Source of the DNA: Saccostrea echinata
Taxonomy: Eukaryota
Direction of reading: 5' to 3'
Length of the DNA stretch: 64,000 nt
NCBI RefSeq assembly: GCF_033153115.1
Contig: NW_026889796.1
Location: forward strand, 15,500,001 to 15,564,000
Shown piece after piece: positions 54,390 through 64,000 of the stretch; the first letter of the stretch is position 1, and every line of letters begins with the position of its first letter. The translations under genes and the position numbers were made by a program. The notes under the pieces were generated by a model, which was given only the letters and a program-made list of their open reading frames with translations, made no database searches and was not told where the DNA came from.

Positions 54390-55130
54390 AACTTTATTTC
54401 TGGGGAACTCATAAAGGTGACAATGTTGAAAAAAAACTACATCTTGATTTTTGTAAGCAAATACTAGGAGTTAAAAAATCTACATGGAATGCAGTAATAC
54501 TGTTGTTTATGCTGAGTTATGTAGACTTCCTCTGTTGTACAAAAGGATGTTTTCAATGATAAAATTTTGGGATAATATATTAGCCAATGATAACTGTATT
54601 ATTAGAAATTGTTATAAGAAAATGTACATTAACTGTGAATCTCATGCACAAAAAAATATGGGCTTTTCAGGTGAAGAAATGCTTAAATGGTCTTGGTTTT
54701 AGTGAAGTTTGGGGTAAACAACAAATTAATACAGCTACCTTAAAATCTATTAAACAATGGATCTTGGATCAGGCTAAAAAAGAAATATTTTCTAAAATAG
54801 AAAGTTCACAGAAATTTTCTTTCTATGAATATCTACTTGTTCAAAAATGTATATCAAAGTTAAGAATATCCTTACACCTTTTAGCTATTGAAACTGGGAG
54901 ATATAATAAAACAAACAAAGCCCACAGGAAATGTTTTTCCTGACATACTTGTGTTGAGGACGAATATAATTTTCTACTAGTATGTCCTGTTTATGCAAAT
55001 TATCGAAGCAAATTTATTAAAAATATTTCTTTAAAAAACTATCCATGTATAAATTTTTGCAATTGTTCAATACTGAGAACTTTAAGGATATGTGTAACCT
55101 CGGTAAATACAGTGTACATATTTATTATAG
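54390..55130 (+). mobile_element. 5'-truncated, degraded LINE (ORF2 C-terminus)
   Basis: Frameshifted remnants HLDFCKQILGVKKST, VYAELCRLPL...IKFW, ISKLRISLHLLAIETGRY, VEDEYNFLLVCP.Y, typical of the C-terminal zinc-knuckle region of non-LTR elements. Confidence 0.85.
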
Positions 55131-57121: not shown

Positions 57122-57666
57122 GTGAGTATCAATCAATAATATAGTGATAGGTGACATGAAGAAACTCGTGAAAGAAAAAGGTAAAAGTTAAGAATATTGA
57201 TCGACCTAACAAAATCTACAAACAGCACAAATTTGTGAACAGGGTAAAAAAAGGACCCTTGGGATTTCCAGAAATCAACGATTTTATGGATAGTCGGTTG
57301 ATTTTTTTTCTTTTCGTGAACAGCCAACGGAGTGTAATTTTTAGAAATTCCTTTCCAAATACGACTCTAAGATTTTGCCCAAATGTACATAAATGACGAA
57401 AATTAAACGACAGAAAATTGGAGGGGGTGGGGGGTGGGTGTATGTTGTGCATTCTTAAGAGGCTACTACAGCAGTAAAAATGTTTTGAGCAGAATTACTA
57501 GACAGCAATAAACTTTTGAAGTTGTTTTAGGTAAAAAAAAAACAGCAAGACAATAGAAAACTTTCAATATCATCTATTTCAACTACACATATCAATATAT
57601 TTTACAAAAATCAAATTTAAGGTCGACCTCCAAAAATAATCTAAAATCATTAAGAGTCTCTCAGAC

Positions 57667-60600
57667 TCATTTTTCATAATATCTTAGTCCCAAAAACTTT
57701 AAAACACGGGTTTTGATGCTTTTTCTTGTCTTGGTTGGAGAGGATTTCTGAAGAAGAAGAAGAAAAAAAATTGTACGCACAAAAAATATTTGAAACTGTT
57801 TAAGAAAAGTCAGTCAAATAAAGAGACGTTTTAAACAGATTTTAATACTTTTATGAACGTCAAACAAAAAAAATACCTTTTCTGAACATGTTCCATGAGC
57901 ATGTTTATCCTCCAAATTTTGCATGCTTGATAAGGGGTTAGGAGTATACTTGGTTTGATTTAGCTTTTCACTCTGAAAGAAAAGGAAAATATAGCCATTT
58001 ATTGTTAATATCCTATAGGAGAAAAATTTAAAGCATTTTTGAATTTCATCTCTCTAAGGGGATGTAAAAAAAATTAAATAAAATGTTATTTACCTTCGGG
58101 CTGTCCTTGAAATAGTCTATATTGAATAGGAAGAGTTTCCTGGGTACAAACAATACATTGTTATTCTCCTCATTAGCTTCCATTTCTCTCTCTATGCTGG
58201 AATTCTTCAATATGAAAATAATTGAAAGTTAATTTTTGATTCCCTTGTAATTGTAATTATTAATTAAGAATACCTCACACACATTAAGAATACTGGTTAC
58301 AACAGTAACAGCTTATGGAGGGTGTGTCGAAGAAAACGTATGAAAACTATTTCAAAATATTAATTTTAAAAATTTCAAAATTTTAATTTTAATATTATTA
58401 AGTATCGAATTACTTTAACAAATCTATAGAAATATTTCTATGCAATAGTTTGCTTTATTCTAAAATAAACAGAACTTTAATAAATCAGCTTTTTAAATTT
58501 GATTTTACATCGAACATTGAATCTTTCAAAGCTATAACTTCACATGTATAATAATAATCTCATCCGTACCTTAATGAGTCGATCTTTTTTCTTTTCCTCC
58601 ATTCTCTGGAAAAAAGTAAAATTAAATATTAATGTTAATATTTAAGTAAAACATATTAACATTCAAACACAACTAACATGTGTATATCACATGAGAAACA
58701 ACTTTTTTTTATGAACTTCTAAAATGTACCTACCACAAGCTCCCCGTGGACTGCTTTCATCATTTCAAATTTTCTGTGTATATCTGCTCGAATGTTGGTC
58801 ACATAATTGGTCCTTTTGGCTACCGTTTCCTATTAATATGGAAGAAAAAAAATTTATGATTTACAATGATTTACAACGGAAGTGGTATTTTGTTTGAAAC
58901 ATGTTTATTAATCGGACTTAAATAATCATAAATTATAAGTCTTAAAATATTAAGTTGATAATATCAATGCCTAGACAATTGATCAATTCGTTATTGATAG
59001 ATTATCAATCAAGGTGATATCACAATAAGTTGAATATCAAATCGTTTTGACATTTTTGAAATATCTATAAGCAAGGATTAGCACTTCTTCAGGGAAAAAA
59101 AAATCTGAATCCATCATATCATTTTAATCAGTTGTTTTACTCACCAAGCATTCCTGCAGAACTTTCCTTTTAACATCATGAGCAGTTTTCTTTCTTTGAG
59201 ATTCGATCTTAAAATATACAAATAATTAATAATAATAATGATAGAAATAAAAGATAAGTCTTTTCGACGAAAGAATTGGTTTATGCAAGTATTAAAATTA
59301 CCTCATGAAGTCATATCGATAATTAAATGATATTAATTGGCGAGTACTTCATACCTTAAGGTCTCCATGAACAACCTCCATTAGTTCCCTTTTTCGCATC
59401 ATGTCGGCCTGTATTTTCTCCATCTTGCTTAACTTTCTGGCTATAGTGTCCTAAAATTGGTATACATTGACTACATTTAAGATAACTTGATTCTAACTCA
59501 CTGTTTATTAAATCAAGATTAAATGGTGAGTACTACGTACCTTAAGTTCTCTGTGCACAGCATCCATTAGCTCCCTTTTTCGAATCATGTTGGCCTGTAT
59601 TTCCTCCATCTTGCTTAACTTTCCGGCTATAGTGTCCTGGAATTAGTATACATTGGCTACATTTAAGATAACTTGATTCTAACTCACTGTTTATTAAATC
59701 AAGATTAAATGGTGAGTAGTACGTACCTTAAGTTCTCTGTGCACAGCATCCATTAGCTCCCTTTTTCGAATCATGTTGGCCTGTATTTCCTCCATCTTGC
59801 TTAACTTTCCGGCTATAGTGTCCTGGAATTAGTATACATTGGCTACATGTAAGATAACTTGATTCTAACTCACTGTTTATTAAATCAAGATTAAATGGTG
59901 AGTACTACGTACCTTAAGTTCTCTGTGCACAGCATCCATTAGCTCCCTTTTTCGAATCATGTTGGCCTGTATTTTCTCCATCTTGCTTAACTTTCTGGCT
60001 ATAGTGTCCTGGAATTAGTATACATTGGTTACATTTAAGATAACTTGATTCTAACTCACTGTTTATTAAATCAAGATTAAATGGTGAGTACTACGTACCT
60101 TAAGTTCTCTGTGCACAGCATCCATTAGCTCCCTTTTTCGAATCATGTTGGCCTGTATTTCCTCCATCTTGCTTAACTTTCCGGCTATAGTGTCCTGGAA
60201 TTAGTATACATTGGCTACATTTAAGATAACTTGATTCTAACTCACTGTTTATTAAATCAAGATTAAATGGTGAGTACTACGTACCTTAAGTTCTCTGTGC
60301 ACAGCATCCATTAGCTCCCTTTTTCGAATCATGTTGGCCTGTATTTTCTCCATCCTGCTTAAGCTTCCGGCTATAGTGTCCTGGAATTAGTATACATTGG
60401 CTACATGTAAGATAACTTGATTCTAATTCACTGTTTATTAAATCATTATTAAATGGTGAGTACTACGTACCTTAAGTTCTCTGTGCACAGCATCCATTAG
60501 CTCCCTTTTGCGAATAATGTCGGCCTGTATTTTCTCCAATTCTCTTAACTTACTAGTTGTGGTGTCCTGGAATTAGTATACATTGGCTACATTTATATAA

Positions 60601-61868
60601 CTTGATTAAAATTCACCGTTCATTAAATCAACATTAATTGGTAAGTACTACGTACTTTAAGCTCTCTGTGTACAGCCTCCATTTGATCTTTCTTCCTCAT
60701 CATGTCGGACCATATTTTTTGCATCTCGTTTTTCTTTCTTGTTACGGTGTCCTAGGATAAGTATACGTTTAGTACATTTTAAAGTTCATGCTTCTAATTC
60801 ATTGTTCATAAAATATACATGAATCAGTGAGTACTACATACCATCAGCTCTCTATGGATATCTTGCATTAACTCCATTTTTCGCATCACGTCGGCCTGTA
60901 TTTTCTCCCTTTCGCTTGACTTTCTGGCTGTAATGTCCTACAATTATACATTGGTTTCATTTTAGAAAATATGCTTCTTATTCACTGTTCCTTAAATTTA
61001 CATTAATAAGCGATTACTATACGTACCTTTAGCTCTCTGTGGATAGCCTCCATTTTATCTGTCTTCCTTGCCATGTCGGACCGTATTTTGCGCATCTCCT
61101 TTGACTTTTTGTTTATAATGTCCTATGAAAAGAATATTTGTAAATAAGTAAATCATAATTCTGCACAACTTGCCTATAATTAATTACAATTTTGAACAAC
61201 TGATAATTTAGTTGATTCAAATATAGGTTAGGCAAATTAAACTGGAATGGGGGTGTCCTTTATATCTCACTGCATCCTTTTCATATTTTTAATATTTATA
61301 AATTATACATAAAACTCTTCGACTTTATTCGATTTATTTATTTCATCCAGGGTTGAGATATTAGATAATTCCAATTTTACTTACAATCATTTCTTGGTGA
61401 ACTTTCTTCATAAGGGCTTTCACAATCTTCTTTCTTTTTCTGTCTTCTGACTCCATTGCCTTACACAAATAATTAAATACAAAAATAAACAAGGATTCTA
61501 GGAGCATTGATGCACATGAACAGCGCGTATTTATTTTGATAAATTATCACCAATAGATAAATTAATTACCTCCAATCTCTCTTGCCTCTCTACCTCCTCA
61601 GCCCAGTTATAACTAAACTTTAAAATCTCAAGTTTGGTCTCCTAAATTAAGACAATTAATGACATCAGATAATTTAAGCACAAAACACTTTCAACTTTTT
61701 TTATCTATTCACAAAATTGAAAAATTAAAAAATAAAAAATTAGATAAATGAACAAAAAGTTCCAGCAATCAATGTCTGTATGTATATTAGTATTAAACGT
61801 AAACTAAAGCTTTGGTATACGCTTACCCCTTTGTCACTGAAATCCAGTATTTCACTGTAGTCCATCAT
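57667..61868 (-). CDS. Unrecognised ~543-aa protein with eleven 32-aa helical repeats; 19 coding exons: 61868-61827, 61641-61570, 61459-61385, 61122-61027, 60937-60842, 60751-60656, 60566-60471, 60380-60285, 60194-60099, 60008-59913, 59822-59727, 59636-59541, 59450-59355, 59207-59145, 58829-58734, 58605-58570, 58204-58094, 57972-57877, 57747-57667
   Basis: All exons are AG/GT bounded, phase 0 and stop-free (1632 nt in total). Repeat exon consensus DTIAGKLSKMEKIQANMIRKRELMDAVHRELK. A 5'UTR donor lies at 62002. The acceptor of the 58204 exon is the least certain. Confidence 0.85.
59340..61125. repeat. Tandem array of ~186-bp units (10 copies), each one 96-nt exon plus ~90-nt intron
   Basis: Low-coordinate exon boundaries recur at 59355, 59541, 59727, 59913, 60099, 60285, 60471, 60656, 60842 and 61027. 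Central copies are nearly identical and outer copies have diverged. Confidence 0.97.
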
Positions 61869-62035
61869 AAATATTTCTTAATTCTACAAAAGAAATAGTA
61901 AAAAAGAGTGTTTACTTAGTTTTTATAACTGTAACTCAGAAATTTAATTCGTAAATTAACCAAATTAAGTAAATATTTCATAGCTGCATTTCACATACTG
62001 ACCTGCTTTCTGCTTAGTTCCTTTGTTTATGGTGA

Positions 62036-62082
62036 TGATTGTGACGTCAACTAAACGCCAGATAGCTATGACGTCACAATCA
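62036..62082. promoter_or_regulatory. Two perfect CRE sites (TGACGTCA) in an inverted repeat at the 5' end of the nested gene
   Basis: TGATTGTGACGTCA (62036-62049) and TGACGTCACAATCA (62069-62082) lie 35-80 bp upstream of the 5'UTR donor at 62002. Confidence 0.5.
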
Positions 62083-63287
62083 CAAAAGAGCAGACAACTT
62101 TCACTCATGCCCATTCTTTGGCCCGGAACATGAAAGCCCGCATGAAACAGGCGTTGTTAACGTGCAAGTATGTCCTGTCTCGTAACAAAATTATAAAAAG
62201 CTATGTATTCAGTGAGCCAATTATGAGCGACTGATTTCTTTTAAAGTTATTGACTTACTTGATTTAAACATACTATAGTATTTCTTAATATAATTTCATG
62301 TAAATTACTTGAATCTGACTCGTTGTGGAAAATTTTATTTTAAAAAATGCTACCCTCTGCGATAAAACCATGCCTTGAAGCGTGATAGAACGTAGCAACA
62401 GTCAACATTGATCGAGAAACCACGCCTTCCGGCGTGATAGAACGTAGCAACGGTCTACATTAATTGACGACGGGTGATATTCCAAAAAAAAAAGTACTGA
62501 CTGCACAGAATTTATGTGCTAACGGTTCATTAAATATAATTAAGATTGCATTTAGTTGAGGGTAACAATGAACTTCTTCATCCCTCGGAAACAGTTTTCA
62601 ATGTCGGCCGCCCCTCCATTCATGATAACTTATGGCTTTGTTCAATGTTTGCCCTACATGTATTTTTTATATTATGTTCAGTAGTATGGATTTTAGGTAA
62701 TTGTACATCGAATAATGCTACATTTTCATCAAGTGATACATGTAAGTCTCCAAGCTGGTTTTAAATCATTTAAAAGTATTTAAAAAATAATGAATAAGGT
62801 TATAGACAAATGTTTATTTTCGATTTTTCAAATTCAAGACATCAATATACTTGATGACTATTAACGATAGTAAAAACCAAAATTCATTGACCGAGGCAAA
62901 TGGTTCAATCAATCTGCTCATGCATTCTCAACTTGTTTGACCAGCTCGTGTATGTTACAGTTAAGGGCGTTTGTTTTGATCCATCATAGTTTAATTGTCC
63001 TTTCATGTGAATATTTACACGTAGGTCGAATCGAACTATTAGTTTTATTTGAAATAATCCTTTGAATATCATGATTTTACTTATGGCAAAAATCTTGTCG
63101 CGAGCCCATTGCAGAGGTGTCTGAGAGAGGAACGAATGACAACTCAGCAAGGGAGATTCAAGGCTGTTAACTTCTGTAGAGGCGTCGGAACCGGGGGAGG
63201 GGATGGGGATGGTAGACATAACATAGGCATTGAAATTTGGGGCTTATAGCCCCCATACGGTTTTTATTTGGTTTAGCCCCCATTTCT

Positions 63288-64000
63288 ATGTCCCCGTATC
63301 GAAGATTCGGGGTTATGTACACTGTAGTTTTTGCCTTATCCGTCCATCTGGCTGTCTGTTTGTCCGCAAAAACTTTATCATTGTTCATAACATTTGATTG
63401 GTTGGAAGTATGGCTTTCATATTTCACATGCGTATTCCTTGTGACAAGACCTTTCTTTGGGTACGATCATATTTGACCTTGACCATGGAGTTTGACCCAG
63501 TTTTGAAAAAAATTACTGAACTTTAACCTTGGCAATATCTTTTGAACAATTAGTGCTAGGAATTTCATACTTCACATGTGTAATTCTTGTGACAAGACCT
63601 GTTTTTGGATATCAACAACTTTGACCCTTTGACCTTGAGCTAGGAGTTTGACCTACTTTTGAAAAACTTTAACCTTGGCCATAACTTCTGAACGGTTGGT
63701 GCAAGGGCTTCCATACTTCACATATGTTATTCTTTTTACAAGACATTCCTTTTGATACCAACAGCTTTAACCCTTTGACCTTGACCTAGGAGTTTTACAT
63801 ACTTTAAAAAAAATAATCTTGGCCATAATTTTTGAACGGTTGGTGCTAGGGCTTTCATACTTCACACATGTAATTCTTGAGACAAGACCTTTCTTTCGGA
63901 TATCAACAACTTTGACCCTTTGACCTTGACCTTGGAGTTTGGCCTACTTTTGAAAAACTTAAACCTTTGCCATAATTTCTTGAACGATTGGTACTACGGC
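63288..64000 (-). mobile_element. Second copy of the same HINE family, cut off by the window end
   Basis: Same hairpin CCCCGTATCGAAGATTCGGGG and same ~146-bp internal repeat as 10325-11313. Confidence 0.85.

What the first reader, a model, noticed from the sequence alone, without database searches (positions are those of the whole stretch)
57667..61868. Hidden 19-exon antisense gene built by serial duplication of an exon+intron cassette
Seen: what looks like a 186-bp satellite is, on the minus strand, ten consecutive AG|96-nt exon|GT units. An 11th diverged copy lies at 58829-58734 and a partial one at 61459-61385. Unique exons on both sides splice in frame from an ATG (61868) to a stop (57667). 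Every intron is phase 0 and no exon has a stop. The ORF track misses it entirely. Inference: a lineage-specific ~543-aa protein whose length can be tuned by unequal crossover or exon skipping, since any exon can be dropped without a frameshift. I recognise no family for it.
Basis: partly seen in the sequence, partly recalled or inferred. Interest (0 to 1): 0.9.

Follow-up and report, generated by a model that had tools for sequence, protein, structure and literature searches.

The report
Oyster repeat-protein gene grown by exon duplication
The apparent 186-bp satellite is the middle of a real minus-strand gene whose 96-nt exon plus 90-nt intron was copied in tandem, one of 13 such genes in this genome encoding an uncharacterised, oyster-restricted helical repeat protein; it is a clean example of a known way of lengthening genes.

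Summary
Observation confirmed. On the minus strand, 19 coding exons run from ATG 61868 to TGA 57667. All are phase 0 and total 1632 nt (543 aa). Ten are consecutive AG|96 nt|GT cassettes with a 185-186 bp period.

It is a gene, not a satellite. The genome holds 13 loci with the same head exons, cassette array and tail exons. Of 106 cassette exons, 104 keep AG and GT exactly 96 nt apart and 102 are open in frame 0. The other frames are mostly closed. Intron lengths drift from 86 to 109 nt, and all 77 short introns carry an in-frame stop. dN/dS is about 0.3.

All 13 loci share a near-invariant 95-bp promoter/leader block with two TGACGTCA sites in a perfect inverted repeat. That block occurs exactly 13 times in the genome.

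Every window exon maps end to end, in order, onto RefSeq proteins of the oyster Saccostrea cucullata. Two isoforms there differ by exactly one 32-aa unit.

Canonical array length varies from 5 to 12 units among paralogs, and five window units form a window-only clade. No Pfam, PDB or Atlas relative was found.

No RNA data could be reached, so splicing in this species is inferred. The scan had other notes on this same stretch. The look-ups returned none for the paralogous loci.

The parts
62036..62082 (-). Promoter element: perfect 14-nt inverted repeat with a 19-nt spacer. Each arm holds a CRE-type palindrome TGACGTCA (62042-62049 and 62069-62076).
   Evidence: The pattern has 4 matches in the window against 0.39 expected. 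The pair is present about 180-210 nt upstream of the ATG in 10 of 13 paralogs; the other three keep one site, with the second mutated.
61996..62090 (-). Near-invariant core promoter plus leader block. It includes the putative non-coding exon 1 (5' end unknown, 3' end 62003) and its GT donor (62002-62001).
   Evidence: The alignment of 13 loci is almost invariant from 62084 to the donor, while sequence further upstream does not align between subfamilies. The block occurs exactly 13 times in the 923-Mb genome, once at each family locus. The transcription start is inferred, not shown.
61827..61883 (-). Exon 2: 15-nt leader after the TTTTGTAG acceptor, then coding exon 1 (ATG 61868, family-conserved ATG 61865; 14 aa, MMDYSEILDFSDKG).
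   Evidence: The peptide is 93-100% identical in all 13 loci and 93% identical to S. cucullata P0003 residues 1-14.
61570..61641 (-). Coding exon 2 (24 aa, ETKLEILKFSYNWAEEVERQERLE).
   Evidence: Identical in amino acids in 11 of the 12 other loci; L013 has one substitution and L023 a one-residue gap. Against the six subfamily-B loci compared, the peptide is 100% identical at 85-86% nucleotide identity, so every difference there is synonymous.
61385..61459 (-). Coding exon 3 (25 aa). Its last 10 residues resemble the end of the repeat unit (LMxxVHxE).
   Evidence: maps to P0003 residues 89-112.
59355..61122 (-). Ten tandem cassettes: 96-nt phase 0-0 exons (coding exons 4-13) separated by 89-90-nt introns. 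Exon starts are 61122, 60937, 60751, 60566, 60380, 60194, 60008, 59822, 59636 and 59450.
   Evidence: Units 5-9 form a window-only clade, while edge units group by position with paralogs.
59145..59207 (-). Coding exon 14 (21 aa linker).
   Evidence: maps to P0003 residues 177-197.
58734..58829 (-). Coding exon 15: the diverged 11th copy of the 96-nt unit.
   Evidence: It has a positional orthologue in 11 of the other 12 loci and maps to P0003 residues 198-229 at 72% identity.
58570..58605 (-). Coding exon 16 (12 aa).
58094..58204 (-). Coding exon 17 (37 aa) with the family motif FVPRKLFLFNI..FKD. An alternative in-frame acceptor lies at 58190/58189.
   Evidence: The motif is invariant in S. 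cucullata relatives.
57877..57972 (-). Coding exon 18 (32 aa, unrelated to the repeat; holds HAHGTCSEK).
57667..57747 (-). Coding exon 19: basic tail ending RVLKFLGLRYYEK, then TGA.
   Evidence: 91% identical to the C-terminus of P0003.
57575..57666 (-). Probable 3' UTR. A variant poly(A) hexamer AATATA lies at 57601-57596.
   Evidence: Homology with the distant subfamily-B paralogs stops between 57527 and 57652 in seven of the eight loci (57791 in L023); hexamer. The 3' end is inferred.

Best explanation
This is an intact protein-coding gene on the minus strand with one non-coding and 19 coding exons (543 aa). It belongs to a 13-member, apparently oyster-restricted family. Its centre arose by repeated tandem duplication of a 186-bp cassette made of one symmetric phase 0-0 exon (96 nt, 32 aa) and one minimal intron (about 90 nt). 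Unequal crossing-over between cassettes adds or removes whole 32-aa units without breaking the frame. That explains why paralogs differ in unit number and why the middle units of each array are nearly identical, introns included. Every short intron carries an in-frame stop, so the units must be spliced out precisely. Because all exons are symmetric, skipping any of them also stays in frame.

The rest is inferred, not shown. The protein is an intracellular, strongly charged, methionine-rich, largely alpha-helical rod. It has a very conserved 38-aa head (YxEILDF, KLEILKF), a disordered tail with a conserved PRKLFLFN motif, and a basic C-terminal helix. The number of 32-aa units sets the length of the rod, or the number of binding modules, between head and tail. 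Transcription is probably driven by a twin-CRE (CREB/ATF-type) inverted repeat just upstream of the leader exon.
For: Gene model.

Family-wide constraint:
- 13 loci carry 106 units; 104 have AG and GT exactly 96 nt apart, while intron lengths range from 86 to 109 nt.
- Frame 0 is open in 102 of 106 units. The other five frames are closed in 51-106 of 106.
- Exon GC is 42% against 24% for introns, and all 77 short introns carry an in-frame stop.
- dN/dS is 0.16-0.64 among close paralogs and 0.24-0.34 between subfamilies. Exon 2 is identical in protein to the six subfamily-B loci compared, at 85-86% DNA identity.
- All 13 loci have the same head, linker and tail exons with AG/GT flanks.
- Between subfamilies, homology starts at the promoter block and in seven of the eight loci ends within about 140 nt of the stop, so what is conserved is the transcription unit.
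- The promoter block occurs exactly 13 times in the genome.

Cross-species evidence: every window exon maps end to end and in order onto S. cucullata RefSeq protein P0003. Five junctions are contiguous there: exon 3|unit, unit|unit, unit|exon 14, exon 14|exon 15 and exon 18|exon 19. Isoforms X1 and X2 differ by exactly one 32-aa unit. Two further family genes have isoforms that lack whole in-frame modules.

Array dynamics: edge units group by position across five paralogs, each group with 96-100% support. Window units 5-9 form a private clade, and L014 carries a 4-unit higher-order duplication. Central exons are 96-100% identical and central introns 94-99%.

Helical rod: an AF2 model of P0003 has one helix over residues 66-233 with pLDDT about 90 over residues 100-190, and a disordered tail at 310-385. 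The window units are 43% charged, 9.4% Met and contain no Pro.
Against: It is therefore unknown whether that species has more cassettes than its models use.

The closest paralogs are recent segmental duplicates (flanks 87-89% identical). Their agreement is partly shared ancestry rather than independent constraint.

The coiled-coil reading is weak. The hydrophobic moment of the unit is not above shuffles (23% of shuffles reach it). No single periodicity stands out. The homodimer prediction gave no verdict.

No evidence bears on the cellular role.
Confidence: 0.82

Rival explanations
1. The gene family is real, but this copy is a silent recent duplicate, or only a few of its ten cassettes enter the mature mRNA. 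The central, nearly identical units would then be mostly skipped pseudo-exons, and the real protein would be much shorter than 543 aa.
For: The central units are so recent (0-4% divergence, introns as similar as exons) that selection has had little time to act on them. The S. cucullata models contain only one or two canonical units plus the diverged one. Two of the 13 loci (L018, L023) already carry stops in their units, and two others (L020, L023) each have one unit that has lost its GT donor. Other first-stage notes claim that this genome often amplifies exon-intron junctions into arrays (unchecked).
Against: The window copy has no stop, no frameshift and no lost splice site in any of its 19 coding exons. 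It also keeps the intact promoter block. Older, diverged units at the array edges are just as intact as the central ones.
Confidence: 0.12
2. It is a non-coding 186-bp satellite whose open frame and AG/GT flanks are accidents, copied along with the repeat unit.
For: Copies of one unit are not independent, so ten open units alone prove little.
Against: Units diverged to about 50% protein identity in 13 loci still keep the frame, the exact 96-nt length and the splice dinucleotides, while their introns accumulate indels. dN/dS is about 0.3. Unique head and tail exons and a conserved promoter flank every array. Homologous annotated proteins exist in another oyster.
Confidence: 0.02
3. Each 32-aa unit is an independent ligand-binding module rather than a spacer, so copy number tunes valency. 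Candidate ligands are actin (the WH2-like idea in another note on this stretch) or metal ions bound by the Met/His-lined face.
For: Specific polar residues are almost invariant across 102 units: H28 and K20 in 100 of 102, E30 in 99, R19 in 96. That is more than a plain spacer helix needs. Four Met positions plus H28 and K20 fall on one helical face.
Against: Neither single units nor whole relatives match Pfam WH2 or any other Pfam family, even at permissive E-values. The AF2 model runs one continuous helix through the unit junctions, unlike the helix-plus-extended-LKKT shape of WH2 (general knowledge). Nothing supports metal binding beyond composition.
Confidence: 0.08

Closest known systems
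Saccostrea cucullata RefSeq proteins XP_062616274.1 ('golgin subfamily A member 6-like protein 1 isoform X2', P0001) and its isoform X1 ('trichohyalin-like', P0003)
   Same: All window exons map colinearly, in order and end to end onto P0003. Head and tail are 88-93% identical and units 44-72%. The proteins share the same head motif, repeat unit, PRKLFLFN motif and basic KF(F/L)GL tail.
   Different: The S. cucullata models have 1-2 canonical units against 10 here, a duplicated head (residues 1-38 and 50-87), and an extra segment of about 65 aa (residues 244-308) with no counterpart in the window gene. Their names are automatic and reflect charged helical composition only. No golgin or trichohyalin domain is found.
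Oyster sperm bindin (Moy et al. 2008, as summarised in PMC5712786)
   Same: It is an oyster gene whose protein carries a variable number (1-5) of tandem repeat units. The review states that oysters use multiple genetic mechanisms to diversify these repeats. From my memory of the primary paper, not re-read here, these mechanisms include recombination and alternative splicing.
   Different: Bindin repeats are about 130-aa F-lectin domains of a secreted acrosomal protein under positive selection. Here the unit is a 32-aa helical segment of a protein with no signal-like N-terminus, under purifying selection (dN/dS about 0.3). There is no sequence relationship.
Classical genes elongated by tandem duplication of symmetric exons, such as fibrillar collagen 54-bp exons and nebulin/titin repeat exons (general knowledge, not tested here)
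   Same: Equal-length, same-phase exons are duplicated together with their introns. The frame is preserved on gain, loss or skipping of a unit.
   Different: The cassettes here are very young and regular (186 bp with minimal 90-nt introns), so the array reads as a satellite. The same array has expanded independently in 13 paralogs.

Membership tests
Gene elongated by tandem exon+intron cassette duplication | Repeated exons of equal length and equal phase, with canonical splice sites | tested here: met
   Ten (plus one) 96-nt phase 0-0 exons, all with AG..GT; 104 of 106 across the family.
Gene elongated by tandem exon+intron cassette duplication | Introns between the repeated exons are homologous to each other, so the whole cassette was copied | tested here: met
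   Adjacent central introns are 94-99% identical and 90 nt long. The tree built on exon plus 85 nt of intron gives coherent unit clades.
Gene elongated by tandem exon+intron cassette duplication | The repeated exons are spliced into the mRNA | not testable with these tools
The only evidence is indirect: unit|unit junctions are contiguous in S. cucullata RefSeq proteins.
Non-coding satellite DNA | No constraint on reading frame or unit sub-structure | tested here: not met
   Frame 0 is open in 102 of 106 units against 0-55 of 106 for the other frames. Exon length is fixed while intron length varies. dN/dS is about 0.3.
Golgin A6 / trichohyalin (names given by RefSeq to relatives) | Match to the family's Pfam domains | tested here: not met
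   No Pfam match reaches its cut-off in single exons or in seven S. cucullata relatives.
WH2 actin-binding repeat (idea of note s1-803642) | Match to the WH2 profile; a short helix followed by an extended LKKT-type segment | tested here: not met
   No WH2 hit at E up to 10 on units or up to 1 on whole relatives. The AF2 model has an uninterrupted helix across units. Actin binding itself was not tested.
Dimeric heptad coiled coil | A 3.5-residue hydrophobic periodicity and self-association | tested here: inconclusive
   A long helix is predicted with high confidence. However, no periodicity or hydrophobic moment rises above shuffles, and the homodimer prediction returned no verdict.

The most novel reading that the evidence does not exclude
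An oyster-restricted family of 13 genes uses a spliceable 186-bp exon+intron cassette as a fast-evolving dial. Each 32-aa unit, with its invariant R19-K20, H28 and E30 and a Met-lined face, would be a discrete binding module. Unequal crossover (between paralogs and perhaps individuals) and cassette skipping (between isoforms) would then tune valency or reach, under a shared twin-CRE promoter that ties the whole family to one signalling input.
Probability: 0.2. Interest if true: 0.6.

Novelty: new member of a known kind. Interest (0 to 1): 0.4.

Why it matters
It shows that a stretch any repeat finder would call a satellite is coding sequence, and it gives a precise 20-exon model for it. It also defines an uncharacterised family of 13 loci in this genome and at least ten in S. 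cucullata, with a head motif, a 32-aa unit, a tail motif and a distinctive promoter. The family is a tidy natural series (5 to 12 canonical units) for studying how tandem exon arrays expand, homogenise and are spliced. The mechanism itself is textbook and the protein's role is unknown, so the value lies mainly in annotation and as a model case.

Tried and rejected
- **Joined protein:** Exons were searched one by one by reference, and whole-protein work used the database proteins P0001-P0016.
- **Pfam:** eight exons and seven relatives gave only sub-threshold noise.
- **PDB sequence search with P0003:** nothing.
- **ESM Atlas with P0003:** no feature hit; the structure hits were generic long helices with TM below 0.35.
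- **Exhaustive HMMER search with the unit profile against 1.84 billion representatives:** two proteins, both S. cucullata.
- **Three word-indexed searches** (whole protein, family profile, tail only): S. cucullata only. How well these libraries cover other molluscs is unknown, so 'oyster-restricted' is provisional.
- **Complex prediction on a homodimer of P0003 residues 88-235:** no verdict. It is not evidence either way.
- **Fourier and helical-moment tests for a heptad pattern:** not significant.
- **Literature search on the RefSeq names plus 'oyster':** no papers.
- **Earlier-findings look-ups for notes on the paralogs:** none.
Full report
**1. The observation**

Tandem Repeats Finder reports a 186-bp array at 59332-61054 (9.3 copies, 87% matches). 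Read on the minus strand, a simple pattern search finds ten consecutive AG|96 nt|GT units. All are open in one frame, with exon starts from 61122 to 59450. An eleventh, diverged unit lies at 58829-58734.

I rebuilt the whole model from the sequence. It has 19 coding exons, and every exon length is a multiple of three. Every exon is open in phase 0 and every intron is GT..AG. The total is 1632 nt, or 543 aa, from ATG 61868 to TGA 57669-57667. No ORF of 70 aa or more lies in 57.5-62.5 kb, so a prokaryote-style ORF list does miss the gene.

**2. Is it more than a satellite that happens to be open?**

Ten copies of one unit are not independent, so I looked for independent copies. A profile of the 32-aa unit (A1) searched against the window's own 923-Mb genome gave 108 exon-sized matches, 105 of them without a stop, clustered in about a dozen places.

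I fetched twelve of these loci and analysed them together with the window:
- There are 106 units in 13 loci. In 104 of them an AG and a GT sit exactly 96 nt apart.
- Frame 0 is open in 102 of 106 units. The other two sense frames are closed in 106 and 94 units, and the antisense frames in 51-97.
- The introns between adjacent units vary from 86 to 109 nt, while the exon never changes length.
- Exons average 42% GC and introns 24%.
- All 77 short introns would introduce an in-frame stop if retained.

This is the pattern expected of spliced coding exons, not of neutral repeats.

**3. The same gene at every locus**

Each of the 13 loci has the same unique head exons, linker exons and tail exons in the same order, with AG/GT flanks. 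The loci fall into two subfamilies: A (the window plus L013-L016) and B (L017-L024).

Coding exon 2 (24 aa) is identical in protein in 11 of the 12 other loci. Against the six subfamily-B loci compared it is 100% identical in protein at only 85-86% DNA identity, so every difference there is synonymous.

Pooled dN/dS is 0.24-0.34 between subfamilies (dS 0.66-0.89). Among the five close paralogs of subfamily A it is 0.16-0.64.

Between subfamilies, DNA homology begins abruptly at 62084. In seven of the eight loci it ends between 57527 and 57652, shortly after the stop codon. What is conserved is therefore the transcription unit. Two loci (L018, L023) carry stops in their units, and two (L020, L023) each have one unit without a GT donor. 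These may be decaying copies.

**4. Promoter and leader**

Aligning the 330 nt upstream of the ATG in all 13 loci shows a near-invariant block of about 95 bp. It has three parts:
- a perfect 14-nt inverted repeat (62036-62049 and 62069-62082, 19-nt spacer), each arm carrying the CRE palindrome TGACGTCA;
- a conserved leader;
- a GT donor at 62002-62001.

The intron that follows ends at a conserved TTTTGTAG acceptor, 15 nt before the ATG. TGACGTCA occurs 4 times in the window against 0.39 expected. The 95-bp block occurs exactly 13 times in the genome, once per family locus.

Its 5' end is not known. In several paralogs the first ATG is absent and only the second is kept, so the conserved start is 61865.

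**5. Evidence from another species**

An exhaustive HMMER search with the unit profile against 1.84 billion representative proteins found only two proteins. Both are RefSeq predictions from the oyster Saccostrea cucullata. Word-indexed searches added thirteen more, all from that species.

The window's genome is not S. cucullata, since exon identities are 33-84%.

Every window exon aligns end to end and in order with the 401-aa protein P0003:
- exon 1 to residues 1-14;
- exon 3 to residues 89-112;
- units to residues 113-144 and 145-176;
- exon 14 to residues 177-197;
- exon 15 to residues 198-229;
- exon 19 to residues 380-401.

Several predicted junctions are thus contiguous in an independently built model.

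Isoforms X1 and X2 of that gene differ by exactly one 32-aa unit. Isoforms of two other family genes lack whole in-frame modules of 28, 53 and 54 aa. To my knowledge NCBI's pipeline proposes alternative isoforms only with transcript support, but I could not verify that here.

**6. How the array grew**

A maximum-likelihood tree was built from 46 units of the five subfamily-A paralogs, using each exon plus 85 nt of intron. Units 1, 2 and 3, the last canonical unit and the diverged unit each group by position across paralogs, with 96-100% support. An array of at least five or six distinct units therefore predates the gene duplications.

Window units 5-9 form a window-only clade. They share a residue (N16) that none of the subfamily-A paralogs has. 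L014 carries a four-unit higher-order duplication.

Canonical unit number ranges from 5 to 12 among loci. In the window, adjacent central exons are 96-100% identical and central introns 94-99% identical. Edge units drop to 65-71%. This is the classic signature of unequal crossing-over in a tandem array. Whether unit number varies among individuals was not testable.

**7. The protein**

The units are 43% charged, 9.4% methionine and proline-free. Across 102 intact units several residues are almost invariant: K20 and H28 (100 of 102), E30 (99), L31 (97), R19 (96), I13 and M17 (90 each).

An AlphaFold2 model of P0003 gives one helix over residues 66-233, with pLDDT about 90 over residues 100-190. 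The tail (310-385) is disordered and ends in a short C-terminal helix.

The protein is not a clean heptad coiled coil. No periodicity or helical moment exceeds shuffles, and a homodimer prediction returned no verdict.

No Pfam, PDB or Atlas relative was found. The RefSeq names (golgin A6-like, trichohyalin-like, ELKS-like, interaptin-like) reflect composition only.

My working model is inferred. The protein is an intracellular helical rod, and the unit number sets its length or its number of modules. A strongly conserved head (YxEILDF, KLEILKF) and a tail (PRKLFLFN, basic KF(F/L)GL end) would be the interacting ends. The near-invariant polar residues suggest that each unit does more than act as a spacer. 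The WH2-like idea in another note on this stretch is not supported by the profile searches or the model.

**8. What could not be done**

Exons were searched singly by reference. How well the protein libraries cover molluscs is unknown, so 'restricted to oysters' is provisional.

**9. Verdict**

It is a real, probably functional gene lengthened by tandem exon+intron duplication, and it encodes a protein with no characterised family.

The gene is neither unique nor truly hidden. It is one of 13 paralogs, and its relatives are already, if only automatically, annotated in another oyster. The mechanism is well known. The interest lies in how clean the case is, in the family-wide variation in array length, and in the conserved twin-CRE promoter.

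Noticed in passing
window 62036-62082, and the same block in L013-L024: A perfect 14-nt inverted repeat carries two TGACGTCA (CRE-type) sites. It is conserved upstream of all 13 family genes and is found nowhere else in the genome as a block. This suggests common CREB/ATF-type regulation.
   Followed up: partly
window 57667-57690 vs L013, L014, L015: Three subfamily-A paralogs end at ...KFLGLK followed by a stop. The window copy has lost that stop and reads four residues further (...LGLRYYEK).
   Followed up: partly
L014 (G000:C47:12792000-12801999), units 2-5 and 6-9: A four-unit (about 750 bp) higher-order duplication lies inside the array. Unit 6 is a chimera of a central unit and unit 2, a footprint of an out-of-register crossover.
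   Followed up: partly
L023 (G000:C47:9752000-9760000) and L018 (G000:C29:33839000-33847000): Units here carry in-frame stops (three in L023, one in L018). L023 also has one unit without a GT donor and a one-residue gap in exon 2. These copies are probably decaying.
   Followed up: no
G000:C10:2740300-2743783, C11:2886899-2888125, C33:33803719-33804480, C29:28506127-28506222: Further weak or fragmentary matches to family exons lie here without the promoter block. They may be fragments or more distant relatives.
   Followed up: no
P0003 (S. cucullata), residues 1-38 and 50-87: The conserved head (two exons in the window gene) is itself duplicated in tandem in the S. cucullata protein.
   Followed up: no
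window 63519-64000: A separate 146-bp tandem repeat (3.3 copies, 80% matches) runs off the window end.
   Followed up: no
window 54484-54943 (+): Two overlapping ORFs of 72 and 118 aa look like the tail of a retroelement ORF. They were not checked.
   Followed up: no
window 58349-58392: A 23-bp AT-rich minisatellite lies inside intron 16. In S. cucullata the corresponding position holds an extra coding segment of about 65 aa that is absent here.
   Followed up: partly
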